The position numbers and the translations under genes were made by a program. From positions 1-64,000 of the IMG/VR virus record IMGVR_UViG_3300029911_000001: a stretch of 64,000 nt of DNA; one strand, 5' to 3'. The notes beneath the pieces were generated by a model. It ran no database searches, was not told where the DNA came from, and worked only from the letters and a program-made list of their open reading frames with translations. Every line of letters begins with the position of its first letter. Positions within the stretch are counted from its first letter, which is position 1. This document shows, piece by piece, positions 1,341 through 62,511 of the stretch.

Positions 1341-2771
1341 TTAGTTCCCCACTCGATCATGAGAGGGATTATTAGCATGATGGTTAAGAACGCAATCGCC
1401 GCAGAAGAGACCCTTACATGCGGGGCACTCCGTGGGGTTGTTGCCCTTGCCACAACCCTTGCAGGTCGGGCTCTCCCACATCTTCGCGGTGTGAGCAGAA
1501 GCAGCCAACGCCATACCACCAAGTTCTGCAAGTGTGTCGCCCCCGATAGCACCTATAGCCCCTTCACCTTCGCCACTGATAGGAGCTTGCATGTTGAAGC
1601 TCTTACCCTTATCATCCTGTGAGCCGCTGTCGGGAGGGGGGTTGAGGAAGTCTGCTACCGGACCCGCTACCTTCTTGTCAGGGGTACGATGGCAGCTACA
1701 GCAGTTGGAGTTACACTTGTGACCCTTATTTGATGTACGGGTCTCGCCGCACAGAGCACACTTGTCTTCAGCCGTCTTAGCCGAAGCTGCTACTGCCATG
1801 GCTTTCTGCTTTTTGCCAATCTGCCGCATGATTTCGAGGAAGGGGTTCGGACGGTAGCCCTTGCCCTGACGCTTGATGGCGATGTCAATCAGCTTGGGGA
1901 AGTCACGCCAGACCTTCTTGAAGACAACTGGGTCTGCACCAATCTCAGCGTTCCATTCTTCGAAAAGGGTGGACTGCTTGACCGACTCCGATGCCTTGAA
2001 TGCATCGTAAATCAAATCGAACAGCACCACGTAACGAGTAGCCTGAGATTCGCCGATGTTGGTGTTAAGCCAGTTGACGAAGAAGCTGCGGAAGTGGTTG
2101 ATGTCGATGTCGGTTTCGACAGCTTCATACTCACCCTCACTCGCGTGCTCTTCCGTGTCCAACACATTAACTTCCTTGCTGTCGTCATTACCCGGCGACC
2201 ACATGGAGTCCGTGTTCTCTTGACGCATGACCTTCTTGATGTAGTTGTTGGCTTCTTCCACACGCCACATAAAAGTCTGAATCAGGAACAACGTGACCTG
2301 ACGTTCTAGAGTTTCGGATTGTGTCTTCTCGGGGAAGGAGTGGATGCGTTCTTCGAACCGGCTAAGCACCTTGCGCTTTGCCAGCGCGTTAATGATGATA
2401 TGGTGGATGGCCTCGTCCTGCTCTTCCTCATCGCGAGACATAAGTTTGGGAGCGATTACTGCCGCGAACCACTTAGCCCAGTTCATGGTTTCGTCAACCG
2501 GCAGACCGGACTCACGTATGTATTCCTTTACATACTGATCGAAGTCTTTGTTGAAAGCAACAATGTAACGCATCCAAGCAGCGTGACGTGCAAGGGCGGC
2601 AGTGACTGGAAAAAAATCAGTTGGTGGTTGGACAGGCTTGCCCTGCAAGTCGGCGAAACAGTAACGTACCGTTCCTTCGGATGCCAATTTAGACGTGCAG
2701 CGAAAGACACTCCCGTCAGCAGAATGGACGATAGCACCAGCACGGATGAGAGGGGAGAATTTGGCGTTCAT
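1341..2771 (-). CDS. hypothetical virion protein with C-terminal Cys/His modules
   Basis: 476 aa ORF with AGGTG RBS; two small Zn-finger-like modules following K-x-A motifs. Confidence 0.75.
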   Translation of the reverse strand: MNAKFSPLIRAGAIVHSADGSVFRCTSKLASEGTVRYCFADLQGKPVQPPTDFFPVTAALARHAAWMRYIVAFNKDFDQYVKEYIRESGLPVDETMNWAKWFAAVIAPKLMSRDEEEQDEAIHHIIINALAKRKVLSRFEERIHSFPEKTQSETLERQVTLFLIQTFMWRVEEANNYIKKVMRQENTDSMWSPGNDDSKEVNVLDTEEHASEGEYEAVETDIDINHFRSFFVNWLNTNIGESQATRYVVLFDLIYDAFKASESVKQSTLFEEWNAEIGADPVVFKKVWRDFPKLIDIAIKRQGKGYRPNPFLEIMRQIGKKQKAMAVAASAKTAEDKCALCGETRTSNKGHKCNSNCCSCHRTPDKKVAGPVADFLNPPPDSGSQDDKGKSFNMQAPISGEGEGAIGAIGGDTLAELGGMALAASAHTAKMWESPTCKGCGKGNNPTECPACKGLFCGDCVLNHHANNPSHDRVGN

Positions 2772-2781
2772 GCTTTTTCAC

Positions 2782-2841
2782 CTACTGTAGGTTTAGAAAA
2801 TATTTACCCGTGACATGGTTGACAATCAAATAAATGAACAT
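2782..2841 (-). pseudogene. truncated GIY-YIG homing endonuclease (N-terminal 19 aa)
   Basis: Translates MFIYLIVNHVTGKYFLNLQ*, resembling MFIYLVTNTINGKAYIG at 22735; keeps the upstream promoter/hairpin element. Confidence 0.7.
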
Positions 2842-2877
2842 ACGAATAACCCTCTAGTATAGAGGGTTATTCGTAGT
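2841..2877 (-). promoter_or_regulatory. RBS-sequestering hairpin with embedded putative late promoter
   Basis: Perfect 16-bp inverted repeat tacgaataaccctcta/tagagggttattcgta; ACTAC motif at its 5' arm. Confidence 0.65.
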
Positions 2878-2892
2878 TGACATTTCGACTGG

Positions 2893-3114
2893 TCAATCCG
2901 TGAGAGGATCGTTAGGTGCTCCGTCAGTCTTCTTATCTTCTGACATCACTGCCTTCAAAGTTTCGAGGTACTCGCTGTGATCCTCGAATGCTTGTGGGTC
3001 GTGGGGAGCACCCTTGTCGTCGGAAGCAGCGTACTTGACGCCCATGCGGTTCAATTCCGAACCGTAAAGTGAGTTCATCGCGTCTGCGTCGGACTTTGCG
3101 ATTTTCTTAGCCAT
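2893..3114 (-). CDS. small hypothetical protein
   Basis: ATG at 3114 preceded by AGGAG; 73 aa. Confidence 0.65.
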   Translation of the reverse strand: MAKKIAKSDADAMNSLYGSELNRMGVKYAASDDKGAPHDPQAFEDHSEYLETLKAVMSEDKKTDGAPNDPLTD

Positions 3115-3193
3115 GGTAACTTTTCTCCTGTTTGAGGTCAAAATGAAATCCTCTATATAATAGAGGCTTTCATAGTTGAAAATTAGAGGTTAT

Positions 3194-3601
3194 TCACTTC
3201 TTTGGCGTTGCTGGTGGTGCTGGTGTTGCCGCGGGTGGTGCTGGTGGTGCAGCCGTTTTGTACCACGCATCCTTGCTCTGGTCATACACATAACTGGTAT
3301 CCCAGCCATTGTCCTTGCGAACACGTTCGACCCATGCGGCCTCCTGCCCTTCAAGGACAGCGTACTGAGCCTTCATTTCGGACATTTTCTCCTTGTACTC
3401 TCCGCTCATGGCAGCGGCGGAGAGAGTCAAAGTCGTTTCCTTCTCGATAGCGAGAAGAACCTGAGCATGGGCAAGGGGGTCAAGCACTTTGGCCGTCACT
3501 TCAGTAGGAGTGACTGTCGGGGTCGGGGTTGGCGGTGGGGTTGACTGAGCAAGGATGCTGGTGGACACCATTGCTAAAGTAAGTAGACCGATTAGCTTCA
3601 C
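3194..3601 (-). CDS. secreted coiled-coil protein
   Basis: Sec-type signal MKLIGLLTLAMVSTSILA-Q; Pro-rich linkers; overlaps the upstream membrane-protein gene. Confidence 0.7.
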   Translation of the reverse strand: MKLIGLLTLAMVSTSILAQSTPPPTPTPTVTPTEVTAKVLDPLAHAQVLLAIEKETTLTLSAAAMSGEYKEKMSEMKAQYAVLEGQEAAWVERVRKDNGWDTSYVYDQSKDAWYKTAAPPAPPAATPAPPATPKK

Positions 3602-3942
3602 TGTGGGGGTTCTCCTTGGGGGGGTACTGTAGTTGTAGGTACTGTGCTCTGCTGGTTATTCTCTGCCCAGCTAGACACTTTGTTAATACCGTACAAAGCC
3701 CCACAAGTAGTGACAATAAACGTTGCTCCAGAAGTAAGAAATGCATCGAACTGTTCGATGGTAACGTACTTGTGATGAACTGAAACAGCGAAGGAGATAC
3801 CGACGCCGAGAATAAAGGCAATAAGACCAGCCATGTGAACTCGGGTTGAAGAGCCGGAACCATCCGACTCGCTATAGACAGACCTCAGCCAGCTAAACAA
3901 GGAAGAAAGAAACTTAAGTATGTAGGTAAATGCAGTGTTCAT
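3598..3942 (-). CDS. two-TM membrane protein, possibly holin-like
   Basis: Two hydrophobic helices after a GSSTR motif; late-type promoter motif upstream. Confidence 0.55.
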   Translation of the reverse strand: MNTAFTYILKFLSSLFSWLRSVYSESDGSGSSTRVHMAGLIAFILGVGISFAVSVHHKYVTIEQFDAFLTSGATFIVTTCGALYGINKVSSWAENNQQSTVPTTTVPPQGEPPQ

Positions 3943-3978
3943 GGAAGCTCTCCTTACTATGGAGTTTAAAGTCCAACT

Positions 3979-6900
3979 TTATTGAATGTAGCCTTTCAGA
4001 GTTCCCCCGTTAAGGGAGCTTCCCTTATGTGCAGTTACCCCCGATGATTCCACCCCGCCTATCGATGGCGGATTTGGCCGTGTGGTGCCATAGTAATCGG
4101 TCGTCAGCCCAGTGTAGATTCCGGTGTATATTGCTGGGCTTATCCCACTGAGGTAGAAACTATTGCCAGAGCCTGCGAACGGGTTGTATACATCAAACGC
4201 TGCTTCTGAAACCCAAGTTTGCGACGGCTCACTCAACATGAGCGGGTCGGCACAGAGGATGTGGTTCGTCCCGCAGGTATCCCCGCTTTGAACGCCGTAC
4301 TCGATGTTGTACGAGGACACCATATCAACCGGATTCGTATCATCGAAGTAGTACATATCGGGCGGGTTGCCGGGGTTGAACGGAGACGCCGTGTATGGCG
4401 AGGTGTAGCCGAGAACGATGTTGTTTGTGAAGTTGTACGGCGTCGTCGTGCAGGCTCCGACCGTGTTGCATCCCGGCTCAAAGAAAATAGGCTGATAGCT
4501 AACGAACGTGTTGTTTGTGAAGTTGACCGTGGCCCCCGCGTCCGCAAAGTAGTCGAACAGCGGACCACCGGCGCGGCAGTAGGTTGAGAGATATGAGCCG
4601 GGAAGCCCAGTCGTGATGTTGAAGTTCTGCGCCGCCCCGGTGAGCTGGACGGACAGCCTCATGCAGTTGCCCATCATCAGGTTGTTGTCGAAGACGAGCG
4701 TAGAGTTTGCGTCCTGCCCCCACTTCCCACTCTGTCCCATGTTGCCAATCCAAACGGAGTCTGTCAGGTTCAGATTGTGGATGAGCGTGTGTGGGCCCAT
4801 GGCGCCGTCCTTCACGTTGTAGCCGATGTAGCAATGGTCGCAGGTAAAGGTATTGAGCAGAGAACCTTGCCCAGACCACGCATCGCCAAACCCGCCACTT
4901 CCTTGGTCCCAGCACGACTTCGCCGGATACGCGGTGTTGACGATTGGATACTGCTCCAGGCATCCGTTTCCGACCATGGTCACGTAGTGCTGCGTCAGTG
5001 TTGAACCAGAAGCGTCTGGAGTCGCGTACCTTTGATAGGTTCCGCTGGTTGTAGCGGAGTCGTTTGCGTGAGTGAGTGGTCCGGTGATGGTTGTTGATGT
5101 CGCGCCCGTGATGATAATGGTCTGAGCGTTGAGGTAGGTGTACGGCGCGGAGAATCCTTCCAGTTGAATGAGGTTTCCTGCAACCAAGGTATTGCTCGCT
5201 GTCAGAGTGATGACGTTACTGGTGATGGAAAATGCAGTGACTGGTTCAGCCCCTCCACCTCCGTCATCGAAGTTCCAGCCAGCGAAGGCATTGAAGTCTA
5301 CGGAGACTCTGTTCAGGGTCGTAGGACCACCCAAGGGTCCACCGATCCCAAGGTTTGTGAAGCCGTGGATGTATAAATCCTGTAGTAGGATATTTGACGT
5401 AGCTTGGTTGATGATGACACCCCAGTTGGCGTAGTCACTTGCTGGTGAGCCGGAGCTACAAGTCGATGGATACTGCTGACCTCCTCCACCAATCGTCGTA
5501 CACGCACCATTGTGTGAGGTAATCTCCAGACCTTCTACATCAACGTATGAGCTACCACTCAAGTACAAGACTGCTCCTACTCCGAATCCTCCGAATAGCT
5601 GAGTTTCGTTACCGGAGAAAGGGTATCCAATCACAGGAGTGCAGTCCCCATCATAGGCACACCCTCCGAAGATTCTAGTAGGTTGCCCCGACGTTCCATT
5701 TTTGGGTGGAGGAATAGAGCACCCGTAGGAGGTTGTAACTCCATGACACAGGCCGTAGGTATTATTTGGATCGACTTGACCGATTCGGCAGGCCGGTGAC
5801 GCCGGGTTGACTTCATTCGGCTGGTTAGCGCAGCTACGGATGACGTACGTGTCACCGCCGTTTCCAACCCACGCTTGATTGCCATACCCGCCTGTCGTGT
5901 ATAGATAGGGGGCTTCATTGAATGCACAGTGCTGATTCGGGGTTGAGCCTATAGGCGCTGTGTCCGCCGTACCATCGCAGGTACCGGTGGGGTTGTCCGT
6001 AGCATCATAGCGAGGTCCACCATTTGATCGTACGAACCATGTCTGGGCTCCGACAAGGGTGTAAACCGCACTCACTACTGAAGAGTTCGTAAGCCCAGAT
6101 TTAGTACCTATAGCCTTCACAGTCTGTGTGGAAGAGACTGTGATCGGAGCAGAGTATGTAGACCCGCTTGAGCAGGTTCCGGGAGTTAATGCTGCGGGGG
6201 TTGAACCATCAGTCGTGTAGCAGATCGTCGCGCCACTGGTAGAATCGCTGATCGTTACTGTCTGAGTGGATGTGTATGTGCCTGTCCCCGGCGAAAAGGT
6301 TGGGTTGGCGACCGGGGTTCCTACGTCGTCGGCCACATAAGGCGACCCAATTGAGTCGCTTGGATAGATAAACATAGCAGGCATAAGCCCAGAGACGGCG
6401 TTGTTTGACCCCGAGGTGCCCGAGCAGATGGTTGTGCTGGTGGTCACATCGGTGACTATATAACTATTTGGGGATGACCCTACCGTACCCGGCGTGAATT
6501 GAAATTTAATCGTGTGGCCTGACGCCGGTGCGGTCGAGCACCCGCCTAAATCTGCTCTAGAACCGCTACCCGCGACAATGTAGAAGACAGACCCGATATT
6601 GGGAATGTAAAAATACCCATCGCCGGTTGTGTCGGCTACGCCTAGTCCAGAATATCCGCCCCCAGACCAATTCAAAACTGCCTGACTATAGTAGGGGTTG
6701 GTGAACGTCAGACTATTGAGTGAAACCATGCAATAGCTGCCGCCCGATGTTACAGCGGTGCCAGAAGATGCTATGCAGGTTGACGGAGCAGTGCTGTCCT
6801 GAGTCCAATGGGAGCCAAGTGTTGAGCCTGTAAAGTTGTCCGTGTAAATCGGACCAGTAGCCCATGTGTACGTGGTCATCGAGAACGGGGGGAGCGTGTC

Positions 6901-9363
6901 GCCGGACGGATTGCTCAACGTCGTAGGCGTAGGCTGGACGATGGGGGGCGTTCCGCTGCTGATTACAGTGCTCTCATTGTTGTCCGTGATGTTCGTGCTG
7001 GTAAATACGGTCTTCGTGACTGTCCCGGTTGGAGCCGCCGCGCCTGCAAAGGTCACCGCCTCGCTGCTGGTCAGGTTCAAGTTGTAGACGATGAGCGAGT
7101 AGTTCCCCGCCCCATCCCCGAATCCAAATGCCTGCACATACGGAACAGCGGGGTTAGCCACGATTTGATACGTGAGCGTCGTCCAGCCGGGATTGGGCTG
7201 CGCCGCTGGTGAACTGTAGGTCGGGGTTCCCGTCTGCGTGACGGCAAGCAGATTCGGCAGCATGGCGGCGTTGACCATATTCAGCGCGATTCCAGACGGC
7301 CTGTCCACCACGCTTGCATTCGTCGGCCCCGGCATGATGCGATTAAAACCCCACAAGGGAGACTTGAGCGCACTGGAGGTACCGCAGGCTCCCGCCGTGT
7401 CGCTGGTCGCTGTATAAAAGGCGTTGGCGTCTTCCGGCAACGCAAAGGCGTTCTGTACCAGTACACCAGCATCGCGCACGCCGAGCAACATATTGAGCGT
7501 TGCATCCAAGCCTGAACCAATACCAGCTACCACGCCGTTGATGGTGCCTTGGGTGACTCCAGCCAGTCCGCATTGGGTGCCGAGGTTGGTCTCGTAGATC
7601 GCTCCCTGCACGCCGAAGTTTGATTGCGAATAGTGCTGGAGGAAGTAGGTATAGCCTGTGCCGGGAATATTAGACGACACCGAATTATAGTTTGAAAGCT
7701 CGGCGAACATCGGTCCAAAAATGTTGGCATTGGAACTGGTGTCGGTCATGATGTTGAAGACATATGGAGCGCCGTCAATGTAATCGGGGGCAGAGCCCGA
7801 ACTGGCGGCTTGCGTCAAGACGTTCTGGTTCCAGCCGCCGTTATCGTTCGACTCCAACACGAAGCCGGAACCAACCATCTTCATCTTTGAGTTGTAAAAG
7901 GACGAATCCCTGAAAATCGCCGTATTCTCGCCGAGAAGGGTGCCGTAGACTAAGCCCTGATTCGCATACAGGTTCTGCCCGTTCGGGCCATTCCAAATCT
8001 CATTACCCATCTCCAGATAGATGTGGTTAAAAACCGAAGTCCATGGGGTAATCTGCCCCGAGTTGCAACGGATAGTAGTGTAAGCATTGCCATTGCCGCA
8101 CGTGCCTGACAGATATGCCTCAAGACTCTGCACGTCATAAGGGGTTGCGTAGGCGGAGAATGTTATCCACGGGTCAGCACCAATTGCAGACGCCAGTTGT
8201 AGTTGCTCTGGCCATCCAATGTCGATGATCCCGCCGTACTGACCAAAAGTACTCGCTGCGCACATCGCACGCGACTCGTAGGGAAGCATGACATTCTCGA
8301 CTGTGCATCCCCAGATGCCTCCCGTCATCAGACGTAGAATCCCCGGCTTCAACGCTAGAAGCCGCTGGTAGACGGCGTTGCGGAACGGTGTTGTGTTGCC
8401 ACCGGTGGGTGCTTCGGTGAGCGCCACGTCCTGCACAATGACTGTGCCGCTGGCGACCGTGAGTTGGACGTTGATTCCTTCGGTTACTTGAGAGCCTGTC
8501 TCAGACGCTGTGAAGGTCTCGGTGTAGTTCGTCCACCCGGCTCCGGCAGTTGCATTAACTGTGGGAGTCACTGTCCCAGTGGTGAAATATGTACCGCCAA
8601 TTCGGTTTACCTGATACGAAATCGTCGGGGTTCCTGTGGTGCCCTTGGCACGGAAGCTCAGCGTATACGACCCATTCAGGTTGATCCACACGTTACCAAG
8701 GGCAGGCTGATCGGCCTGCATGGTCAGCGTATTTGGCGCGACCATATGGAGAGCCTGCGGGGCGGTAGAAGATGGCGACAGGTCTGTGGTCTCGAAAGAG
8801 CCGTTGGCTGTGCTGCTCAAGCCAAAGTAACCCGCTGAACTCGCCGCCGTCGATGTATACCCACCGGCGCAGGTGCTGAGAGCCGACGTACACCGCACGA
8901 TCATCAAATCGCCGTTCGAGCATCCTGTTCCCCATGTGCCATGGAGAGTCTGCCCGTTGGACCCGGAGGCTGCGTCGCTTGACGTGATCGTTCCTGTCTC
9001 ACCCGTGTCTGCGCCGTAAACAACCTGAAAAGTAGCTCCCTGCCAGAAGTTCGCAGGCTGTGGGGAGTACTGGTTCTGGTCAACCCATGTCGATGTGGTT
9101 CCCGAAAGGCAGGTTGTTGCCATGTTCCACATCTGCGGGTTAAAAGAACCACCCGCAGCGGCCAGCAGATTTGCCGACATCTGACCGTTGAGATAGAGCG
9201 CGCCATCGTCAAGATTGACGCCAAAGACGTGCCCATTTGGACCTGTTGGCAGGACGGATTGGATACCGCCGCCCGACGCCACGGGAATCGTGATCGTCGT
9301 CTGGGCAAAAAGAGCCCCTGAAAACAATAAAACCAAAAATAGAACTAGGTTTTTACTTAGCAT
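3979..9363 (-). CDS. secreted multidomain protein: clan-A (GH51-like) glycoside hydrolase, Fn3/CHB_HEX_C-like domain and right-handed beta-helix
   Basis: Signal peptide (SGALFA-Q); FRNAVYQRLLALKPGILRLMTGG, EMGNEIWN and IYETN motifs; PTFSPGTGTYTSTQTVTISDSTSGATICYTTDGSTP; C-terminal beta-helix repeats ending TDYYGTTRPNPPSIGGVE. Confidence 0.75.
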   Translation of the reverse strand: MLSKNLVLFLVLLFSGALFAQTTITIPVASGGGIQSVLPTGPNGHVFGVNLDDGALYLNGQMSANLLAAAGGSFNPQMWNMATTCLSGTTSTWVDQNQYSPQPANFWQGATFQVVYGADTGETGTITSSDAASGSNGQTLHGTWGTGCSNGDLMIVRCTSALSTCAGGYTSTAASSAGYFGLSSTANGSFETTDLSPSSTAPQALHMVAPNTLTMQADQPALGNVWINLNGSYTLSFRAKGTTGTPTISYQVNRIGGTYFTTGTVTPTVNATAGAGWTNYTETFTASETGSQVTEGINVQLTVASGTVIVQDVALTEAPTGGNTTPFRNAVYQRLLALKPGILRLMTGGIWGCTVENVMLPYESRAMCAASTFGQYGGIIDIGWPEQLQLASAIGADPWITFSAYATPYDVQSLEAYLSGTCGNGNAYTTIRCNSGQITPWTSVFNHIYLEMGNEIWNGPNGQNLYANQGLVYGTLLGENTAIFRDSSFYNSKMKMVGSGFVLESNDNGGWNQNVLTQAASSGSAPDYIDGAPYVFNIMTDTSSNANIFGPMFAELSNYNSVSSNIPGTGYTYFLQHYSQSNFGVQGAIYETNLGTQCGLAGVTQGTINGVVAGIGSGLDATLNMLLGVRDAGVLVQNAFALPEDANAFYTATSDTAGACGTSSALKSPLWGFNRIMPGPTNASVVDRPSGIALNMVNAAMLPNLLAVTQTGTPTYSSPAAQPNPGWTTLTYQIVANPAVPYVQAFGFGDGAGNYSLIVYNLNLTSSEAVTFAGAAAPTGTVTKTVFTSTNITDNNESTVISSGTPPIVQPTPTTLSNPSGDTLPPFSMTTYTWATGPIYTDNFTGSTLGSHWTQDSTAPSTCIASSGTAVTSGGSYCMVSLNSLTFTNPYYSQAVLNWSGGGYSGLGVADTTGDGYFYIPNIGSVFYIVAGSGSRADLGGCSTAPASGHTIKFQFTPGTVGSSPNSYIVTDVTTSTTICSGTSGSNNAVSGLMPAMFIYPSDSIGSPYVADDVGTPVANPTFSPGTGTYTSTQTVTISDSTSGATICYTTDGSTPAALTPGTCSSGSTYSAPITVSSTQTVKAIGTKSGLTNSSVVSAVYTLVGAQTWFVRSNGGPRYDATDNPTGTCDGTADTAPIGSTPNQHCAFNEAPYLYTTGGYGNQAWVGNGGDTYVIRSCANQPNEVNPASPACRIGQVDPNNTYGLCHGVTTSYGCSIPPPKNGTSGQPTRIFGGCAYDGDCTPVIGYPFSGNETQLFGGFGVGAVLYLSGSSYVDVEGLEITSHNGACTTIGGGGQQYPSTCSSGSPASDYANWGVIINQATSNILLQDLYIHGFTNLGIGGPLGGPTTLNRVSVDFNAFAGWNFDDGGGGAEPVTAFSITSNVITLTASNTLVAGNLIQLEGFSAPYTYLNAQTIIITGATSTTITGPLTHANDSATTSGTYQRYATPDASGSTLTQHYVTMVGNGCLEQYPIVNTAYPAKSCWDQGSGGFGDAWSGQGSLLNTFTCDHCYIGYNVKDGAMGPHTLIHNLNLTDSVWIGNMGQSGKWGQDANSTLVFDNNLMMGNCMRLSVQLTGAAQNFNITTGLPGSYLSTYCRAGGPLFDYFADAGATVNFTNNTFVSYQPIFFEPGCNTVGACTTTPYNFTNNIVLGYTSPYTASPFNPGNPPDMYYFDDTNPVDMVSSYNIEYGVQSGDTCGTNHILCADPLMLSEPSQTWVSEAAFDVYNPFAGSGNSFYLSGISPAIYTGIYTGLTTDYYGTTRPNPPSIGGVESSGVTAHKGSSLNGGTLKGYIQ

Positions 9364-9676
9364 TGGTTACCCGAACTCCTGAAAGACCGTGTTGAACGGC
9401 GGGGATTATTATGGTTTTACCGTCCACTTTTACTCTCTGTTCATTACCAGTTTGCCTAATTTGCACGTAGGTTCCCGTTCCCGTAGCACAGGTTGAAGGC
9501 GACCCTGTGAGCGTTACCGAGTCAGCACAGGTACCAATTTTATGATGTGCCCCGTGTGGTAGAACTATCTTATTCAGCTTCGTGTCCCCTACTATAACGT
9601 AGAGGGGGGTGAATACGATGGTCTGAGCCATCGCGGGGAGGCAGAATAGGAACAGTAGTAATCGAATATTCTTCAC
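9353..9676 (-). CDS. small secreted protein
   Basis: GTG start after GGAG; signal MKNIRLLLFLFCLPAMA-Q. Confidence 0.6.
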   Translation of the reverse strand: MKNIRLLLFLFCLPAMAQTIVFTPLYVIVGDTKLNKIVLPHGAHHKIGTCADSVTLTGSPSTCATGTGTYVQIRQTGNEQRVKVDGKTIIIPAVQHGLSGVRVTNAK

Positions 9677-9867
9677 TGGTCGTGCTCCTTCTTCCAATTA
9701 ATACCCGCGTCCCAGAATAAGACTGCGAAAGCACGCATCTTTTCTTCCCCTGCAATTACCGGGAGCGAATCGGCGACAGGAGAAATGTGTCGCGACTTCC
9801 ACCGCTCCCACTGCTTGTTGAAATGTAACCTGCTGTTGAACTGCAATCTGCTCTGCTGTTCATCCAT
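9673..9867 (-). CDS. hypothetical protein
   Basis: 64 aa; GAGGGG RBS; 4-nt overlap with the next gene. Confidence 0.5.
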   Translation of the reverse strand: MDEQQSRLQFNSRLHFNKQWERWKSRHISPVADSLPVIAGEEKMRAFAVLFWDAGINWKKEHDQ

Positions 9868-9879
9868 GCCATACCCCTC

Positions 9880-12800
9880 TTAGTTAGCCTGTGTAAGAGT
9901 ACAGTCCACCGTGTACCCACCGACAGTACCCGATGTTGATACAGCATAGGTGAAGTTATTAGTCGCGAACGTTGCTACGGTGGATACCTGAATCGGTGAT
10001 CCGTTGAGGTTCGGGTGCCCTGTCGTCGTGTTTAGCGCCGGGTAGGAGTAGGACTGCGCATTTCCGGCTGGGTCTGTATACCCAAGGGTAACTGTCGCTG
10101 TACCAGCCCAAGCTGTGGTAACCCAAAGAGAACAACCGTAATACCATGGCCCACTCTGGTTCTGCGAATCGTTGAACAAGGTAGTTGTGCCTATTGGACC
10201 TGTAGCAGCTATCTGACCTGTGTCGGCACGGTCTGCTGATGTCCCGACGCCAACCGTTGGGAATCCTTCCAGATTGTTGATTGCGCCCGGTATACCCAAG
10301 TGTCCATATAGGTCGAAGTGGAAGGAATACCCGTTAGGCAGCTTAATGTCGAGAGGGTCACCCAACTGTCCGGGACCAGAAAGAATTCGTACGGCGGTGT
10401 TCCCAGTTCCAGACGTTGTATCCTGTATGTCCAAAGTATCTGTTGGCACAAATGTAGTTGGACCAATTCCAAGGGAGCCTGCGTTAGTGTATAGGTTGCT
10501 TACACTACCGCCTGCCGCAGCGCAAGCCCCGTCGCCGCGTAGGAAGGTTGACGATGAGCAGGAACCAGACCACAACCCGTACACGTCAGCCGCTACCGCA
10601 TCCGAGATTGCTCCGGTCGTAGTCGTGTTCTTGACGATACCTGTAGCCAGAGTAGCCCAATTCTGGTTGCTCGTTCCGAGTGTGAGAGTTGCTGTGTTAG
10701 CTACCCCCGAGCCGCCCTGAGCAGGACTCCATATGCTTGTCTCACCCGCCGCACCCACATCCCACGTTACCTTTCCGGTTGAAATTGGAACATACATATA
10801 GAACTGACCCACCGTCGGAGTACCTGACCCCGTAGCCTCGTTCAGCCCTAAACACCCGCCCGTGATTGTAGAGCATCCCGTAGGAGGAGAGACCCCTGAT
10901 GAGAGGGAACCGGTGGCCGTGAGAGCTACAAACGTTGCGTCGCCACTGGCATCGATCTGCGCCGGGCATGTCCCAACTACAGTGGTGCTCGACCCGGAGC
11001 ATCCGAATCCTGCGATGCCATGCACTGACAGTGGGTACGGAACGGCATTTCCAGCCGTCCAGTTCAGCCCTACGTTGCCAACGTGGGCAGGCCACAGGCT
11101 GTAAGGGTTGTAACTATCAATCCAGACCATTCCGGTATTGGGTCCGTTCTCGCCTCTTAGCGCGACGCCACCGGCAAAGGAATTTACCGAAGGGTAGCCA
11201 AAACCGCTTGCGTACAAGTCGATTCGGTCTGAAGTTGAACCAATGCTGGCGAAAGACTCTCCGCTCATAAGCAGATGTCCGGCTGTGCTGCTATTGCCGA
11301 AAACACCATCCAGCGGCGCAAATGGAGCGTTCGCTGAAATCACACCACCTTGCGTCACTCCATAATCGAGATAGCTACTGTTACAAAATGTTCCACCTGA
11401 GAAGCAAGCCGAGTTACCGTTAAACAACCACTGGCCACTTGTGTTGCTGCTGATTGTATTTCCAGCAGGGTCTTTGAACTCCGTCATACTGGTTTGTCCG
11501 GTAGCCCAGTTGTTCCACTGAAAGGCAATACCATATGGAGATAAATTACTGATGAAGTCGGACCCAAACAGTCCAGATGTCGATCCTCCAAATCCCTCAG
11601 TTCCAGCACTCATAAAGGTTGGAGGAGCGGCTCCTTTTAGCGAACCGTCAGCGTTTAGGTAAAAACTCTCATCGTTTGCATTTTCGATATCAATAGCACC
11701 ACCGTTACTAGCAGTCGCTCCGAGACCAGATTCCTGAAAAAAGAACCCTTGGCATCCGGCTTCACCAGCAGTAAGGCACCGATTTGTCCCTTGTATGAAT
11801 GCGGTGCCTTGTTCATCGAAGTTAGTGTCAGAGACTACCTCTGCTGACCACGTCCCACCGTTAGGTCCTAGCTGAAAAGTAGACGGAGGAGTTCCTGACC
11901 CAGACTTCACAATTCTTGCGGCAGGATAAAGGGTGACGTTCGATGGCGTTGTTCCCCGGTTGGCAAAGGTACAGGTTCCCCACGTTGTGTGTCCATTCAG
12001 AGAGCTATTCCAAGCTGGGAAAGTGCTGCCAGAGGTGCAAGATGAGGTAGTAATATTTTGCTGATCGTTCACACCATCAAACACGTAGGTGTTTGTGTAG
12101 TTGTACACAAATGACGTAGTAGCAGGTAGAGACACTTGCATTTGTTCAGAGTATTGTTGCGGAAGTTGAAATGGGTTGACCGACGAAGTACCTTCAGTCA
12201 TATAGATAAGGTTTGTCCCATCAAGAGAATCTGTCGCCCAGTACCCCGTACGCAAGTTGTAAGGCGAGGCAAGGTCGGCTGCTGATGTTAGGTTGTGAAG
12301 ATGGCTTTTCAGGACGACGACACTGACGTTCGGACGAGTAATTGGCAACGTGATTGTCTGAGTCGGAGCCGAGCCGGATACACCTGTGATTTTGGACTCT
12401 TCAAGAAACTGATTACCAATTACTGCAACGGAGTCTCCTATGCTAAAAGTACCTGACCCTCCTTGCATGGCGATGGATGTGGACACAGGAGCATCTGGCG
12501 TTGTGTTAGGCTCCAGATTCACGTTAATTGCGCATCCACCAACTGAAGTGGTGGGAAGACCACCAGAAGTCGCCATCTGGTACATCCAATAAAGGGCTGC
12601 TGTATTGCATGGTGCAGACCACGCAGTGAATCCCGTCGAATATCCTCGCAACTGAGTAGTAACAATTGGTGCAGTAGTTTCCACAAGCTGTGATCCCGCC
12701 GAAGGCCAGCACTGCTGAGGAATACCGGGTCCACCACAATTATGTGCCGAGAAGGTTATGTTCGGTGCTGAGTAGGTTCCAACGGTAGGTGAGTCGGGGA

Positions 12801-13659
12801 CTGCTTCACCACCCAATTCGTGAAATGCGACATTGCCTTCGTCACTGGAATAAGCCCTTCCAGCTTGCGATGCATTGTAGAGATATATCCCTCCGGTATC
12901 ACCTACACTAGGGGCAAAGTGCCAGATAGTCAAAGCCTGCTTTGTCGAAGCCGCCGACATATTGTCATAAATTTGAACCGTGGTGGCAGACGTTCCTTCT
13001 GCGGCTAATAGCCCATTCGATAAAGAGTAAGGTCCATACGAGGTCATATTAAATGTATGACCTGATGTCCCATTTGTGAGTGGAGGTTGCAAGGTGTAGT
13101 TTTCCTCAAAAGCGGACAGACCTCCGTAGATCGCCCCCGGTTGAGTGAAGAATGACGCATTGGGTGCTGTGAGATTCTGAGTCGAGGTGCCCAGCGTCTG
13201 TGTAACCTGCGTAATACCCGCCGTGCTTTCGTTGATGTGTGAGGGACCACCAATAGTGTTAGCATTAGTTGCCAGACCTACATAATTGGGGGTTTGACCT
13301 ACGACCGAGCCACTGCCCCCACTCCCGCTACAGGAGAGCACTCCCGCTGAAACCGTGCAGGAAGTTCCGTCTGGCTTCATAAGTCCAAGGGTTGAGTTAG
13401 TTGCGACTGGAGCATTGGAGGACAGTGCATCCCAATAGGAGGATAGAGATGCCGGAGTGTGCCCCGAGTTATTGGCGACCTTGGAGATGTAAGTCAACCC
13501 ACCATAGGTAACCATGTCGTTGACGTTATAGGATATTGAGCCACTCCACGCCCCCAGATATACTACCAGCGTACGTGTAATTTGGGCGGAAAGGGGGGTG
13601 GGGGCGGCTACACCCAGTCCAACAGCCATCGCCAATATTACCAACAAAAGTCGCTTCAT
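9880..13659 (-). CDS. signal-peptide-bearing fibre/adhesin-like protein with an N-terminal CBM5/12-like domain
   Basis: Signal MKRLLLVILAMAVGLGVAAPTPLSA-Q; WSGSISYNVNDMVTYGGLTY..YW; fibre-type motifs ATNSTLGLMKPDG, STFLRGDG and SLGIG; G/S/T-rich 1259 aa. Confidence 0.7.
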   Translation of the reverse strand: MKRLLLVILAMAVGLGVAAPTPLSAQITRTLVVYLGAWSGSISYNVNDMVTYGGLTYISKVANNSGHTPASLSSYWDALSSNAPVATNSTLGLMKPDGTSCTVSAGVLSCSGSGGSGSVVGQTPNYVGLATNANTIGGPSHINESTAGITQVTQTLGTSTQNLTAPNASFFTQPGAIYGGLSAFEENYTLQPPLTNGTSGHTFNMTSYGPYSLSNGLLAAEGTSATTVQIYDNMSAASTKQALTIWHFAPSVGDTGGIYLYNASQAGRAYSSDEGNVAFHELGGEAVPDSPTVGTYSAPNITFSAHNCGGPGIPQQCWPSAGSQLVETTAPIVTTQLRGYSTGFTAWSAPCNTAALYWMYQMATSGGLPTTSVGGCAINVNLEPNTTPDAPVSTSIAMQGGSGTFSIGDSVAVIGNQFLEESKITGVSGSAPTQTITLPITRPNVSVVVLKSHLHNLTSAADLASPYNLRTGYWATDSLDGTNLIYMTEGTSSVNPFQLPQQYSEQMQVSLPATTSFVYNYTNTYVFDGVNDQQNITTSSCTSGSTFPAWNSSLNGHTTWGTCTFANRGTTPSNVTLYPAARIVKSGSGTPPSTFQLGPNGGTWSAEVVSDTNFDEQGTAFIQGTNRCLTAGEAGCQGFFFQESGLGATASNGGAIDIENANDESFYLNADGSLKGAAPPTFMSAGTEGFGGSTSGLFGSDFISNLSPYGIAFQWNNWATGQTSMTEFKDPAGNTISSNTSGQWLFNGNSACFSGGTFCNSSYLDYGVTQGGVISANAPFAPLDGVFGNSSTAGHLLMSGESFASIGSTSDRIDLYASGFGYPSVNSFAGGVALRGENGPNTGMVWIDSYNPYSLWPAHVGNVGLNWTAGNAVPYPLSVHGIAGFGCSGSSTTVVGTCPAQIDASGDATFVALTATGSLSSGVSPPTGCSTITGGCLGLNEATGSGTPTVGQFYMYVPISTGKVTWDVGAAGETSIWSPAQGGSGVANTATLTLGTSNQNWATLATGIVKNTTTTGAISDAVAADVYGLWSGSCSSSTFLRGDGACAAAGGSVSNLYTNAGSLGIGPTTFVPTDTLDIQDTTSGTGNTAVRILSGPGQLGDPLDIKLPNGYSFHFDLYGHLGIPGAINNLEGFPTVGVGTSADRADTGQIAATGPIGTTTLFNDSQNQSGPWYYGCSLWVTTAWAGTATVTLGYTDPAGNAQSYSYPALNTTTGHPNLNGSPIQVSTVATFATNNFTYAVSTSGTVGGYTVDCTLTQAN

Positions 13660-13709
13660 TTGTCCTCCATCTTGTATATAAGAATCTCGTAGTCTGTTTT
13701 TATCTTTGA

Positions 13710-14606
13710 CTACAAAGAGATGAGGTCAAAGGCACCATTGGTGATATAAAGCTTATAGGGGAGATTGGTTTCAATGTCAGTAAACGGCAGGTAGGGAACC
13801 CCCACTCCACTCAGCACTGGGATAAACTCCAATGCACCACTCGTGACTTGAAGCTGGTACAAGCTGCTCGTAACCGAGTCAATCAGTATCACCTCACTCA
13901 CGCCTGCTGCCACTACAACAGGGATGACAGTCACTGCTCCATCTGCAACTACAACGTTATAGGCACCCTCTGTAACGGTATCCACAAATGTGAATACAAG
14001 CACCGTAACTTGAGCCGTTGTAGTAAGTGCGAGGTGCCCCACCACGTCATAGGCGTCCAACGTAAAGAGAGTTGTTGTAGACACTCCTTCTGGAAAGAAC
14101 ACACTCCCAACGCCCCCTGTATCGATGAGCCCAGAGTCATACCCCGTCGCCGTTATTCTAATTTGAACAATACCCGTGGTCTCCCAGATAAGGGTGAGGG
14201 GGACGTAAAGGGCTGTGACCGAGTTAGGGATAGCTCTAAGGATTGCAGTTGGGGTGGGGTTTGTTCCTACGTCTCCTGCGCTACTGTACCCTGCTATCAA
14301 AGCGAAGCTGGGTAACCCCCTCACCCCTGAGTCTATAAAGAAGGGTCTGGGCATGTGGTGTATGGCTTGAATCACTCCCTGTAGGTTGATTGAAGTGTCC
14401 ATATAGAGCAGGTACCTATTATTTTCGACATCGAACGCGAATGTACGTACCGGGGTGAGGTACCCATCCACATACACTTCAAGGTCGCGGCGAGGGTCGA
14501 ACTCCCCTAGAGGTCCTTCCTGCACAAATGGACCGAGGTAGTCATTCAGAATCCACTGGATGCGGTCAGGGTAGGGGGTATTGGTTTCAAAACTAAACAT
14601 CGTCAT
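13710..14606 (-). CDS. putative virion structural protein with three C-terminal ~23-aa repeats
   Basis: Beta-rich 298 aa; three D-x-x-T-x3-Y-x-[LV]-x-[VI]-x2-G-A repeats. Confidence 0.65.
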   Translation of the reverse strand: MTMFSFETNTPYPDRIQWILNDYLGPFVQEGPLGEFDPRRDLEVYVDGYLTPVRTFAFDVENNRYLLYMDTSINLQGVIQAIHHMPRPFFIDSGVRGLPSFALIAGYSSAGDVGTNPTPTAILRAIPNSVTALYVPLTLIWETTGIVQIRITATGYDSGLIDTGGVGSVFFPEGVSTTTLFTLDAYDVVGHLALTTTAQVTVLVFTFVDTVTEGAYNVVVADGAVTVIPVVVAAGVSEVILIDSVTSSLYQLQVTSGALEFIPVLSGVGVPYLPFTDIETNLPYKLYITNGAFDLISL

Positions 14607-17099: not shown

Positions 17100-17444
17100 T
17101 CAATTGTCAGAGAGACTGCGGAAGTCGAATGGGCTACTGTTGTTCTCACCGTAGAAAACAACTTGAATCCTACTGTGTAGGTTAGGTACCCCAGCGTACC
17201 CCATAGAAAGGAGGCGACGAACGACGAGGGCTCTCAGGTATTTTCGAAACCCCCTTATATTTTGGTCAGCCTTTGTGTTATTACACCACTCACAGGCGGG
17301 GAGGAGGTTGTCGATGGTGTTCTGTCCACCCATGCAGCGGGGAGTGGCATGGTCTATGGTCTTAGCTTCCCGACCACAGAACCAGCATCTCCCCTCACAC
17401 TTTCTAATAGCTTCAATCCAAAGGGTTCTAGAAATGCGGGACAA
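17100..17444 (-). CDS. HNH endonuclease
   Basis: CWFCG..TIDHATPRCMGG...NLLPACEWCNNTK. Confidence 0.85.
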   Translation of the reverse strand: MSRISRTLWIEAIRKCEGRCWFCGREAKTIDHATPRCMGGQNTIDNLLPACEWCNNTKADQNIRGFRKYLRALVVRRLLSMGYAGVPNLHSRIQVVFYGENNSSPFDFRSLSDN

Positions 17445-20749: not shown

Positions 20750-20759
20750 ACTAATACCC

Positions 20760-20795
20760 AAAAAGCGAAGGGACTGAGATTTCTCTCAGTCCCTT
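20760..20795 (-). terminator. intrinsic terminator after the major capsid gene
   Basis: 12-bp stem aagggactgaga/tctcagtccctt followed by a T-run on the minus strand. Confidence 0.75.
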
Positions 20796-30401: not shown

Positions 30402-30502
30402 GCGACTCTCCAAGTATCAGTTACTTCTAACTAATACCCAGAAAGTCGCAAAGTTGATTCCACTATCAATAAATGGCTGATACCAGAATCAAATAACAGT
30501 AA

Positions 30503-60515: not shown

Positions 60516-60750
60516 TCTCCTGCCTCCATGAAGTGCGTGATGGGACCATACTTCGGCTGGGCTGCAATCTTCCAGCAGTTTATGATTCGGAATGCTCGAC
60601 CTGTGCCGGTGAGAATACGACCAGTCTGAGTCTTCACTGCGAAGAAGCGTTCCTTCGATTCATCGGTGGGGGCTCCGGGAGTCCATGCCTCTGGAGGCAG
60701 GGTACCGGCCCAGTCACCAATCGCTTGCAGATGTTTTTCTTTTTCTCTCA
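60512..60750 (-). CDS. hypothetical protein
   Basis: Overlaps both neighbours; start uncertain. Confidence 0.5.
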
Positions 60751-61512: not shown

Positions 61513-61577
61513 GAACCTATCAACCTCTCAGATGCTGAGGAGCTAACCTCTACTAAAGAGGTTGATAGTCACGAAAG

Positions 61578-61658
61578 AGCTACGAGAGGGATTCGAACCC
61601 CCGGTGTTTGTATGCCGCATTACAAGTGCGGTGCATTCGACCACTCAGCCATCGTAGC
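61578..61658 (-). tRNA. tRNA-Thr(UGU) with a 12-nt variable region
   Basis: GCTACGA/TCGTAGC acceptor; CCGCA-CTTGTAA-TGCGG; GGGGG-TTCGAAT-CCCTC; no encoded CCA. Confidence 0.85.
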
Positions 61659-61664
61659 ATACCT

Positions 61665-61934: not shown

Positions 61935-61942
61935 GTATCCTC

Positions 61943-62413: not shown

Positions 62414-62419
62414 GAATCT

Positions 62420-62506: not shown

Positions 62507-62511
62507 ATAAC

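What the first reader, a model, noticed from the sequence alone, without database searches (positions are those of the whole stretch)
3194..13700. Late-controlled block of Sec-secreted giant proteins, including a tail-fibre-like protein with a signal peptide
Seen: four of six consecutive genes have signal peptides, all with predicted cleavage before Gln (ILA-Q, LFA-Q, AMA-Q, LSA-Q), and a fifth is a two-TM protein. Late-type promoter motifs precede 13659 and 3942. The 1259 aa protein carries fibre-typical motifs and a CBM5/12-like domain. Established: tailed-phage virion proteins normally assemble in the cytoplasm without signal peptides. Inference: these proteins may be exported and added to virions at or after lysis (disulfide-bonded fibres; many Cys pairs are present), or may remodel the host surface or EPS for exit or exclusion.
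Basis: partly seen in the sequence, partly recalled or inferred. Interest (0 to 1): 0.72.

Follow-up and report, generated by a model that had tools for sequence, protein, structure and literature searches.

The report
Sec-exported fibre and depolymerase cassette
A jumbo phage of soil Acidobacteria carries a gene block whose fibre-like protein and sugar-cutting enzyme have host-style export signals, and cultured relatives have the same arrangement, so whether exported proteins ever join a tailed virus particle can now be tested.

Summary
The core observation holds. On the minus strand, four of six consecutive genes (13659-3194) start with Sec/SPI-type signal peptides cleaved before Gln, and a fifth is a small membrane protein. 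The window is a jumbo myovirus related to Tunturiibacter phage Tunturi_5.

- **1794-aa protein:** a fusion of a GH51-like glycosidase and a right-handed beta-helix. The helix's closest relatives are signal-peptide proteins in Acidobacteriaceae exopolysaccharide (EPS) synthesis clusters.
- **1259-aa protein:** fibre-like. Its last 300 residues are modelled as an intertwined homotrimer.
- **Cysteines:** both giants have even counts, mostly in close pairs. Signal-less virion proteins are Cys-poor.

The pattern is general. Tunturi_5 gp337-342 (six genes), Tunturi_2 and Tunturi_4 genes, several metagenomic phages and 95 of 145 relatives carry such signals, mostly with Gln at +1. A Granulicella genome shows the same Gln preference.

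Best reading: an exported, disulfide-stabilised cassette aimed at host EPS. Whether its products stay free or are added to virions is open and needs virion proteomics. The promoter-like motif is real before 13659, absent before 3942, and its timing is unknown.

The parts
13675..13693 (-). Promoter-like motif ACTACGAGATTCTTATATA, 16 nt upstream of the 1259-aa gene
   Evidence: Pattern ACTAC-N7-11-TA[TG]A occurs 11 times in the 231-kb record; 6 copies lie within 60 nt upstream of a same-strand start, and a seventh does if the 2806-aa gene starts at 152855. Timing class unknown.
9880..13659 (-). 1259-aa exported fibre-like protein. Signal peptide residues 1-25 (LSA|Q); CBM5/12-like residues 37-76; central beta-rich region about 290-610; conserved 75-aa module residues 975-1052; trimeric C-terminal part 960-1259; 20 Cys, mostly in close pairs
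   Evidence: 95 of 145 relatives have signal-peptide-like N-termini, 74 with Gln; trimer score 0.84 against best control 0.00.
9673..9867 (-). 64-aa charged protein without signal peptide; function unknown
   Evidence: Called as a gene in every copy of the phage.
9353..9676 (-). 107-aa exported protein (GTG start, signal peptide MKNIRLLLFLFCLPAMA|Q, 2 Cys in the mature part); function unknown
   Evidence: No Pfam or PHROG match.
6814..9363 (-). N-terminal part of the 1794-aa protein: signal peptide (residues 1-20, LFA|Q), CBM4/9-like domain and GH51-like (beta/alpha)8 glycosidase with GNE acid/base (about E455) and YE nucleophile (about E591) conserved
   Evidence: 64 homologues, many with PF22848/PF02018, some named alpha-L-arabinofuranosidase, nearly all with a signal peptide; the family profile hits GH51 structures at E 1e-11.
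6073..6291 (-). CHB_HEX_C / Fn3-associated domain (residues 1025-1097) linking the two enzyme modules
   Evidence: Pfam E 5.5e-15 and 1.4e-11, both above cut-off.
3979..6051 (-). C-terminal right-handed beta-helix module of the 1794-aa protein (residues about 1105-1794), with 14 conserved Cys
   Evidence: 35-59% identity to about 600-aa signal-peptide proteins in Acidobacteriaceae Wzx/Wzy EPS clusters. 30-35% identity to Tunturi_1/2/4 'virion structural proteins'. AF2 model pLDDT 60.5; Foldseek top hits are beta-helix glycosidases and lyases and phage tailspikes.
3598..3942 (-). 114-aa small membrane protein (two clear transmembrane helices; conserved motif S-x-YSE-x-DGSGSS-x-R)
   Evidence: 62 homologues at 44-74% identity on phage-sized contigs. 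Next to signal-peptide proteins in two other phage loci with complete neighbouring genes, L079 and L080. No endolysin nearby.
3194..3601 (-). 135-aa exported protein (signal peptide ILA|Q, Pro/Thr-rich linkers flanking a helical core, no Cys); its GTG start overlaps the stop of the upstream gene
   Evidence: No family match. No similarity to Tunturi_5 gp340.
3150..3166 (-). Terminator-like hairpin CCTCTATTATATAGAGG plus T-rich tail closing the block
   Evidence: A second, longer hairpin lies at 2875-2841.
13710..14606 (-). Upstream flank: conserved structural-module gene (homologue of Tunturi_5 gp343), no signal peptide
   Evidence: 32% identity, E 7e-21.
1341..3141 (-). Downstream flank: homologues of Tunturi_5 gp344 (2893-3141) and of the N-terminal part of gp345, annotated 'virion structural protein' (1341-2771)

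Best explanation
The block is a variable cassette of an acidobacterial jumbo phage that encodes exported proteins aimed at the host's exopolysaccharide (EPS) or cell surface.

1. Export (inferred from sequence). The host Sec translocon exports the 1259-, 107-, 1794- and 135-aa proteins. Signal peptidase I cuts before Gln, which may then cyclise to pyroglutamate.
2. Folding (inferred from Cys pattern). The two giants fold in the oxidising periplasm with many local disulfides.
3. The enzyme. The 1794-aa protein joins a GH51-like glycosidase to a beta-helix of the family that Acidobacteriaceae encode in their own EPS synthesis clusters. It most likely cuts host EPS (homology and fold shown, activity inferred).
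4. The fibre. The 1259-aa protein is a homotrimeric fibre-like, carbohydrate-binding protein (trimer modelled, binding inferred).
5. Role (inferred). I take them to act mainly as free factors of the infected cell. They would be released by host secretion or at lysis, and would thin or cut EPS around the infected cell and its neighbours so that progeny escape and reach new hosts.
6. The 114-aa membrane protein recurs next to such genes as a conserved companion. Its role is unknown.
For: - Signal peptides: canonical n/h/c regions on four genes.
- Conservation of the signal in the 1259-aa protein's family: 7 of 8 first homologues and 95 of 145 representatives, 74 with Gln.
- Conservation in the glycosidase family: nearly all homologues have a signal peptide.
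- Host match: a random 400 kb of a Granulicella genome has small-x-small|Q after 40% of signal-like N-termini, against 9.3% in control windows (p 2e-12).
- Cysteines: even counts, mostly in close pairs. 14 Cys are conserved in the beta-helix family. Signal-less virion proteins have a median of 0.4% Cys, against about 2% for exported ones. In phage loci L071 and L073, Cys-free virion genes are followed by 2.3-2.5% Cys signal-peptide proteins.
- Enzyme identity: the N-terminal profile hits GH51 structures with both catalytic Glu columns conserved. The beta-helix has homologues in GT2/GT4/Wzx/Wzy clusters, and its fold matches beta-helix glycosidases, lyases and tailspikes, including RbmB.
- No particle-binding N-domain: the mature proteins begin directly with CBM-like or enzyme domains.
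- Other virion candidates: a signal-less baseplate (Baseplate_J) with giant Ig-domain proteins lies at 79-129 kb.
- Variable cassette: the flanks are conserved with Tunturi_5, but the signal-peptide blocks are not homologous and sit on opposite sides of the gp343 homologue.
Against: - No export, cleavage, activity or expression has been measured. No RNA run holds this DNA.
- Sec reaches only the periplasm, and a route across the outer membrane is not identified.
- In small relatives (L071, L073, Tunturi_2, Tunturi_4) the signal-peptide proteins occupy the usual receptor-binding-protein slot, at the end of the tail genes and before the lysis genes. No other obvious candidate is present, which favours a virion role.
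- The Tunturi genome records name several of them 'tail fiber protein' or 'virion structural protein'.
- The 1259-aa protein has no enzyme signature and looks like a fibre.
Confidence: 0.5

Rival explanations
1. Virion arming from the periplasm. The exported fibre and depolymerase are true receptor-binding or tailspike components. They fold with disulfides in the periplasm and dock onto cytoplasm-built particles once the inner membrane is breached or after lysis.
For: - In small phage contigs and in Tunturi_2 and Tunturi_4, signal-peptide proteins sit in the receptor-binding-protein slot.
- Tunturi_5 has six such genes in a row inside its structural module, named tail fiber in the record.
- The C-terminal part of the 1259-aa protein models as an intertwined trimer.
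- A small beta-barrel in the 1259-aa model resembles domains of phage baseplate and depolymerase proteins, weakly (Z 8.0).
- The cassettes turn over like host-range modules.
Against: - No tailed phage is known, to my knowledge, to assemble Sec-exported tail parts, and two literature searches found none.
- The time and concentration window at lysis is short.
- No N-terminal attachment domain is recognisable.
- This phage has a separate signal-less baseplate and giant-protein module.
- The Tunturi names come from automatic annotation, not proteomics.
Confidence: 0.27
2. Carbon-acquisition auxiliary genes. The glycosidase/beta-helix enzyme, and perhaps the carbohydrate-binding fibre, are host-derived secreted CAZymes. 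They boost polymer degradation by the infected cell to feed phage production and have no specific role in entry or exit.
For: - Homologues are ordinary secreted multidomain glycosidases on large cellular contigs.
- Phage CAZymes with signal peptides are on record: 5% of 64,678 prophage CAZymes (PMC13507307).
Against: - The beta-helix family is tied to EPS synthesis clusters rather than to plant-polymer utilisation loci.
- The enzyme sits inside the structural module together with a trimeric fibre.
- Analogous blocks in related phages hold several fibre-like proteins without enzyme signatures.
Confidence: 0.12
3. Surface modification for exclusion. The exported proteins alter or mask receptors or EPS of the infected cell, to block superinfection or to stop progeny from re-adsorbing to debris.
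For: Export, carbohydrate-binding and EPS-degrading features. Exported exclusion lipoproteins such as T5 Llp are established (from my own knowledge).
Against: - Known exclusion proteins are small; 1259- and 1794-aa proteins are costly for that role.
- The cassette lies in the structural module and not among early genes, though timing was not measured.
Confidence: 0.08
4. The N-terminal hydrophobic segments are not export signals. They would be membrane anchors or propeptides removed by a phage protease, and the proteins stay cytoplasmic.
For: No cleavage data. A P. gingivalis phage study suggested that predicted signal peptides on capsid proteins are removed by the prohead protease (PMC10367356).
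Against: - Canonical -3/-1 residues.
- The host-specific Gln(+1) habit.
- Cellular homologues of both enzyme modules carry the same kind of signal.
- A paired-Cys pattern that would not be expected to form disulfides in the cytoplasm.
Confidence: 0.03

Closest known systems
Phage tailspike / capsule depolymerases (P22, HK620, Sf6, Det7, Klebsiella phage depolymerases)
   Same: Right-handed beta-helix carbohydrate-active module, encoded in a phage structural region, variable between related phages.
   Different: Known ones lack signal peptides, carry an N-terminal particle-binding domain and assemble in the cytoplasm. Here there is a Sec signal, no recognisable adaptor domain, many paired Cys, and a fusion to a GH51-like glycosidase.
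Host EPS-processing beta-helix enzymes encoded in EPS loci (for example V. cholerae RbmB; periplasmic alginate lyases and epimerases)
   Same: Signal peptide plus beta-helix. The phage module is 35-59% identical to Acidobacteriaceae proteins embedded in Wzx/Wzy clusters. RbmB is among the structural matches.
   Different: The phage copy lies outside any EPS cluster, is fused to further domains, and sits in a virion-gene neighbourhood. The acidobacterial family itself is uncharacterised: no Pfam match and no PDB sequence match.
Signal-peptide genes obeying the Bacteroidetes Q-rule in Porphyromonas gingivalis phages (PMC10367356)
   Same: Phage genes with SPI-type signals exposing Gln, read as adaptation to the host's secretion system.
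   Different: Those are five genes of unknown function in temperate phages of another phylum. Here the proteins are giant fibre and enzyme proteins, in Acidobacteriota phages, arranged as whole cassettes.
Virus-encoded CAZyme auxiliary metabolic genes of soil viruses
   Same: A glycoside hydrolase of host origin in a soil phage. A minority (5%) of prophage CAZymes have signal peptides (PMC13507307).
   Different: Embedded in the structural module, fused to an EPS-locus beta-helix, and accompanied by an exported trimeric fibre and a conserved membrane protein.
Filamentous phage pIII/pVIII (Inoviridae)
   Same: Receptor-binding and coat proteins made with Sec signal peptides, disulfide-bonded in the periplasm (established knowledge, from memory).
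   Different: Inoviruses assemble by extrusion at the membrane. This is a tailed jumbo myovirus whose particles form in the cytoplasm. There is no sequence relation.

Membership tests
Sec/SPI (type I) signal peptide | Positively charged n-region, 8-16 residue uncharged hydrophobic h-region, small residues at -3 and -1 | tested here: met
   MKR.../LSA|Q, MKNIR.../AMA|Q, MLSK.../LFA|Q, MK.../ILA|Q. Rule-based only; SignalP was not available.
Sec/SPI (type I) signal peptide | Signal conserved in homologues while the mature sequence diverges | tested here: met
   7 of 8 first homologues; 95 of 145 representatives; nearly all GH-module homologues; host beta-helix homologues.
Sec/SPI (type I) signal peptide | Actual translocation and cleavage | not testable with these tools
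   Needs N-terminal proteomics or cell fractionation.
Q-rule type SPI substrates (described for Bacteroidetes) | Gln at +1 in most SPI substrates of the host, and in the phage proteins | tested here: met
   Phage: 4 of 4 in the block; Tunturi_5 gp337-342 6 of 6; L007 7 of 7. Host sample: 40% against 9.3% in controls, p 2e-12. The predictor is crude, so fractions are approximate.
Q-rule type SPI substrates (described for Bacteroidetes) | Host glutaminyl cyclase present | tested here: inconclusive
   PF05096 found in 2 of 5 Acidobacteriaceae genomes. The M28-type cyclase was not searched.
Phage tail fibre | Homotrimeric elongated protein | tested here: met
   Three copies of residues 960-1259: score 0.84, best of 3 controls 0.00. 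That mark was reached by 20 of 30 proteins solved as pairs of one chain and by 1 of 23 solved as single chains. My own alignment and three copies were used, so those counts hold only roughly. The monomer model is poor (pLDDT 44).
Phage tail fibre | N-terminal domain that attaches to the baseplate or tail; cytoplasmic assembly (no signal peptide) | tested here: not met
   The mature N-terminus is a CBM5/12-like domain straight after a signal peptide. No paralogue or shared N-domain with baseplate-module proteins.
Phage tail fibre | Presence in purified virions | not testable with these tools
   The Tunturi paper reports no mass spectrometry.
Tailspike / depolymerase | Right-handed parallel beta-helix catalytic domain | tested here: met
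   Model pLDDT 60.5, pTM 0.68. All top Foldseek hits are beta-helix CAZymes or tailspikes, E down to 7e-7, but TM-scores are only 0.2-0.49.
Tailspike / depolymerase | N-terminal particle-binding domain | tested here: not met
   The protein starts with a signal peptide and then CBM and GH51-like domains.
GH51-like clan A glycoside hydrolase | (beta/alpha)8 domain with GNE acid/base Glu and a nucleophile Glu | tested here: met
   The profile of 31 homologues hits GH51 structures at E 1e-11. The G-N-E columns are invariant or nearly so, and the Y-E column is nearly invariant. Substrate unknown.
Acidobacteriaceae EPS-locus beta-helix family | Sequence homology over the whole about 600-aa module, with conserved Cys | tested here: met
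   35-59% identity over about 670 residues in 34 loci; 14 conserved Cys.
Holin (for the 114-aa protein) | Small protein with 1-3 transmembrane helices, encoded next to an endolysin | tested here: inconclusive
   Transmembrane helices are present. No Phage_lysozyme or Amidase_2 in the 231-kb record, and the only SLT domain is in a tail-module protein at 125.8 kb. The record is 74% complete.
Auxiliary metabolic gene | Host-derived metabolic enzyme not part of virion or lysis functions | tested here: inconclusive
   Host origin is plausible. Independence from the infection machinery is not established, since the gene lies within the structural module.

The most novel reading that the evidence does not exclude
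Tailed phages of Acidobacteriota build their receptor-binding fibres and depolymerases outside the cytoplasm. The proteins are Sec-exported, capped with pyroGlu and disulfide-bonded in the periplasm, and then dock onto cytoplasm-assembled particles when the envelope is breached. That would be a two-compartment assembly route not known for Caudoviricetes, with the conserved small membrane protein possibly taking part.
Probability: 0.22. Interest if true: 0.92.

Novelty: new variant of a known kind. Interest (0 to 1): 0.74.

Why it matters
Tail fibres and depolymerases decide which hosts a phage can infect, and textbooks have them assemble in the cytoplasm. Here whole cassettes of such proteins carry host-adapted export signals and disulfide-type cysteine patterns. 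This holds in an uncultured jumbo phage and in at least three of the cultured Tunturi phages of Acidobacteriota (Tunturi_2, _4 and _5), a dominant and poorly studied soil phylum.

There are two possible outcomes:
- These phages secrete a battery of EPS-targeting proteins from the infected cell. That would bear on biofilm and EPS turnover and on soil carbon.
- They arm their virions from the periplasm. That would be a new assembly route.

Either way, automatic labels such as 'tail fiber' or 'virion structural protein' for these genes need checking. Because cultured phage-host pairs exist, the question is directly testable. The work also suggests that the Gln(+1) rule, described as specific to Bacteroidetes, extends to Acidobacteriaceae.

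Tried and rejected
- PHROGs and Pfam on the six block proteins: only a sub-threshold CBM5/12 and CHB_HEX_C/Fn3_assoc.
- tblastn of the 1259-aa protein against 50,697 phage records: no match.
- PDB sequence search with single sequences: nothing useful. The beta-helix profile against PDB found nothing.
- Protein-atlas look-ups: scores 0.77-0.83, leads only.
- AF2 monomer of residues 60-1259 of the fibre: mean pLDDT 44. Only a small beta-barrel matched phage tail and depolymerase domains, at Z 8.0, which is within the range of chance arrangements.
- Comparison of the 107- and 135-aa proteins with Tunturi_5 gp339 and gp340: no similarity.
- Lysis-cassette idea for the 114/135-aa pair: no endolysin family found in the record, and the lipoprotein cluster at 217-219 kb gave no informative domains. 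Left open.
- P0012 (855 aa, 98% identical) looked like a stand-alone glycosidase variant but is a gene cut by a contig end.
- Expression: no RNA run holds this DNA, only relatives' proteins.
- PHROGs on the small phage locus L073, to find an alternative receptor-binding protein: no hits.
- The sigma-70 promoter and terminator scan of the block was at background level.
- Two literature searches for signal peptides on tail fibres or depolymerases found no precedent for tailed phages.
Full report
**What the window is.** The window is the first 64 kb of a 231,108-bp IMG/VR virus record rated 74% complete. It holds a capsid protein, prohead protease, tail sheath, several homing endonucleases and tRNAs. 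The capsid protein is 72% identical to that of Tunturiibacter phage Tunturi_5, a cultured 309-kb jumbo myovirus of Acidobacteriota (PMC11924767). The same phage, with an identical block, occurs in at least five samples. One contig is 431,749 bp long.

**The observation.** Six co-directional minus-strand genes with good ribosome-binding sites fill 13659-3194.

| Gene (window coordinates) | Length | N-terminus |
|---|---|---|
| 13659-9880 | 1259 aa | signal peptide, LSA\|Q |
| 9867-9673 | 64 aa | no signal peptide |
| 9676-9353 (GTG start) | 107 aa | signal peptide, AMA\|Q |
| 9363-3979 | 1794 aa | signal peptide, LFA\|Q |
| 3942-3598 | 114 aa | membrane protein, two clear transmembrane helices |
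| 3601-3194 | 135 aa | signal peptide, ILA\|Q |

- About 12 of about 257 called genes in the whole record have convincing signal or lipoprotein N-termini. Four within six genes arises in 0.6% of permutations.
- Mature cysteine counts are even (20, 36, 2), and most Cys sit in close pairs.
- A promoter-like motif, ACTAC-N7-11-TA[TG]A, lies just upstream of 13659. It has 11 copies in the genome; 6 sit within 60 nt upstream of a gene start, and a seventh does if the 2806-aa gene starts at 152855.
- The motif is absent before 3942, before the capsid gene and before the sheath gene. 'Late-controlled' is therefore unproven.
- A hairpin with a T-rich tail closes the block at 3166-3150.

**The 1794-aa protein.**
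- Residues about 21-850 belong to a large family of secreted multidomain glycosidases. Many members carry PF22848 and CBM4/9, and some are named alpha-L-arabinofuranosidase.
- A profile of this family hits GH51 crystal structures at E 1e-11. The GNE acid/base column and the YE nucleophile column are both conserved.
- Residues 1025-1097 are a CHB_HEX_C domain.
- Residues about 1105-1794 are 35-59% identical to about 600-aa proteins of Granulicella, Edaphobacter, Terriglobus and Bryocella. Those begin with a signal peptide followed by ETWYVRPDGGTRY.
- These host genes sit among GT2, GT4, Wzx-like flippase, Wzy polymerase and UDP-glucose dehydrogenase genes, so they lie in EPS synthesis clusters.
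- The family has 14 conserved Cys.
- An AF2 model (pLDDT 60.5, pTM 0.68) matches only right-handed beta-helix glycosidases, lyases and phage tailspikes, among them the Vibrio matrix lyase RbmB. E-values reach 7e-7, but TM-scores are low.
- The same module is 30-35% identical to Tunturi_1, Tunturi_2 and Tunturi_4 'virion structural proteins'. Tunturi_2 gp17 and Tunturi_4 gp114 also begin with signal peptides.

**The 1259-aa protein.**
- Word-based search found only a 75-aa module (residues 975-1052) shared at more than 80% identity with other large proteins.
- An exhaustive HMMER search found 386 relatives. Of 145 representatives, 95 have signal-peptide-like N-termini, 74 of them with Gln at the cut.
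- All five genomic contexts inspected look like phage: Mu-type portal, DnaB, lysozyme, ERF.
- The monomer model is poor (pLDDT 44).
- Three copies of residues 960-1259 fold as an intertwined trimer. The score was 0.84 against a best control of 0.00. In the tool's calibration that mark was reached by 20 of 30 proteins solved as pairs of one chain and by 1 of 23 solved as single chains. I used my own alignment and three copies, so those counts hold only roughly.
- This supports a fibre-like homotrimer. It does not show that the trimer sits on a virion.

**Generality.**
- Tunturi_5 gp337-gp342 are six consecutive genes (1381, 602, 120, 135, 1293 and 1186 aa). All have signal peptides cut before Gln.
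- They lie between homologues of the genes that flank the block here. The flanks are conserved (gp343, gp344, gp345), but the blocks themselves share no detectable similarity and sit on opposite sides of the gp343 homologue. That is the behaviour of a fast-turning host-specificity cassette.
- Metagenomic phage loci L006 and L007 have ten and seven signal-peptide genes in a row.
- In L071 and L073, Cys-free, signal-less virion genes are followed by signal-peptide proteins with 2.3-2.5% Cys. In L073 a lysozyme gene follows within a few kb.
- The 114-aa membrane protein is the best-conserved gene of the block, with 62 homologues at 44-74% identity. In two other phage loci with complete neighbouring genes (L079, L080) it lies next to signal-peptide proteins; in L081 the neighbouring large gene is cut at its N-terminus.

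**Host match.** In 400 kb taken at even intervals from a Granulicella chromosome, 40% of signal-like N-termini carry small-x-small|Q. Control windows give 9.3% (Fisher p 2e-12). My predictor is crude and includes false positives, so the true fraction is probably higher. A plant-type glutaminyl cyclase (PF05096) is present in 2 of 5 Acidobacteriaceae genomes. The Gln(+1) rule has been described as specific to Bacteroidetes (PMC5837995). P. gingivalis phages are reported to have five unknown genes that obey it (PMC10367356).

**Interpretation.** Export is well supported by sequence logic: canonical signals, conservation, a host-specific cleavage habit, signals on the cellular homologues, and paired Cys. 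I put about 0.8 on genuine export.

What happens afterwards is open. I favour free, exported EPS-targeting factors (0.5), for three reasons:
- The enzyme modules are of cellular secreted type.
- No particle-binding N-domain is recognisable.
- This phage has a separate signal-less, Cys-poor baseplate and giant-protein module at 79-129 kb, including Baseplate_J and He_PIG Ig domains.

The main rival is periplasmic arming of virions (about 0.27). It draws weight from three points:
- Signal-peptide proteins occupy the receptor-binding-protein slot in small relatives.
- The 1259-aa protein has a trimeric fibre architecture.
- The cassettes are embedded in the structural module.

Weaker rivals are a pure carbon-acquisition role, an exclusion role, and non-functional signals.

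**Comparison with what is known.** Beta-helix depolymerases, phage CAZyme genes (5% of prophage CAZymes have signal peptides; PMC13507307) and Q-rule phage genes are each on record. What I could not find in the literature is whole cassettes of exported fibre and depolymerase proteins in tailed phages. The Tunturi paper does not mention signal peptides. I therefore class this as a new variant of a known kind, with a sizeable chance of something more unusual.

**Limits.**
- SignalP was not available.
- Both structure models are of moderate or low confidence.
- There are no expression or proteomic data.
- The host sample for the Gln rule is one genome.
- Gene calls in the loci are simple ORF calls.

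Noticed in passing
Loci L051-L070 (Granulicella sp. MAG chromosome, 20 stretches of 20 kb): Acidobacteriaceae appear to share the Gln(+1) signal-peptidase habit described as specific to Bacteroidetes. 40% of signal-like N-termini have small-x-small|Q, against 9.3% of control windows (p 2e-12). PF05096 glutaminyl cyclase is present in 2 of 5 genomes.
   Followed up: partly
window 3598-3942; loci L079 9001-9315, L080 9001-9297, L081 2491-2751: A conserved small membrane protein family (motif S-x-YSE-x-DGSGSS-x-R, then transmembrane helices) recurs on phage-sized contigs. In L079 and L080 it lies next to signal-peptide proteins. It is far better conserved than its neighbours. Function unknown.
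   Followed up: partly
window 14593-17064: The 823-aa structural-module gene carries an intein (Hint and intein-splicing domains with an endonuclease-like insert). Its Tunturi_5 counterpart gp336 is 344 aa, about the size expected for an intein-free form.
   Followed up: partly
window 17100-17444, 19316-20761, 29448-30413: Free-standing HNH and GIY-YIG type homing endonuclease genes are scattered through the head and tail module. One sits directly downstream of the capsid gene.
   Followed up: no
window 60748-61359: A 203-aa protein starts with a twin-arginine-like signal (MLVSRRNFLQTSVALALVSPLTALA). It has no Pfam match.
   Followed up: no
G000 152855-161275 (outside the window): A 2806-aa protein with a lipobox-like N-terminus (LVFAFGC), 2% Cys, and the same ACTAC-N-TATA motif about 36 nt upstream of its likely start. 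It is another giant exported protein of this phage.
   Followed up: no
G000 217713-219558 (outside the window): Two small lipoprotein-like genes (LCAVGC, LCVVGC) followed by a 401-aa signal-peptide protein. This may be a spanin-like or surface cassette. Pfam found nothing.
   Followed up: partly
Loci L071 and L073: There is a sharp compositional split in small phage contigs. The virion genes just upstream of the signal-peptide genes have 0.0% Cys in L073 and 0.0-0.5% in L071. The adjacent signal-peptide proteins have 2.3-2.5% Cys.
   Followed up: partly
Locus L075 (JGI 3300029953 contig of 431,749 bp): The same phage, with an identical 1259-aa protein and the same gene order, lies on a 431.7-kb contig. 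The true genome is probably much larger than the 231-kb record, unless that contig is a concatemer or chimera.
   Followed up: no
window 2841-2875 and 3150-3166: Two terminator-like hairpins share the core CCTCTA...TAGAGG. This may be a phage-specific terminator or regulatory repeat.
   Followed up: no
window 61577-64000: A cluster of tRNA genes (Thr-TGT, Gln-TTG, Thr-GGT, Thr-CGT) continues past the window end, as is typical of jumbo phages.
   Followed up: no
Loci L009, L014, L019, L027, L041 and others: In Acidobacteriaceae EPS clusters the signal-peptide beta-helix gene usually follows a 1100-1650-aa lipoprotein. In the one such lipoprotein scanned with Pfam (L041) this is full of He_PIG Ig-like repeats. 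The same Ig domain occurs in the phage's signal-less giant proteins at 92-101 kb.
   Followed up: no
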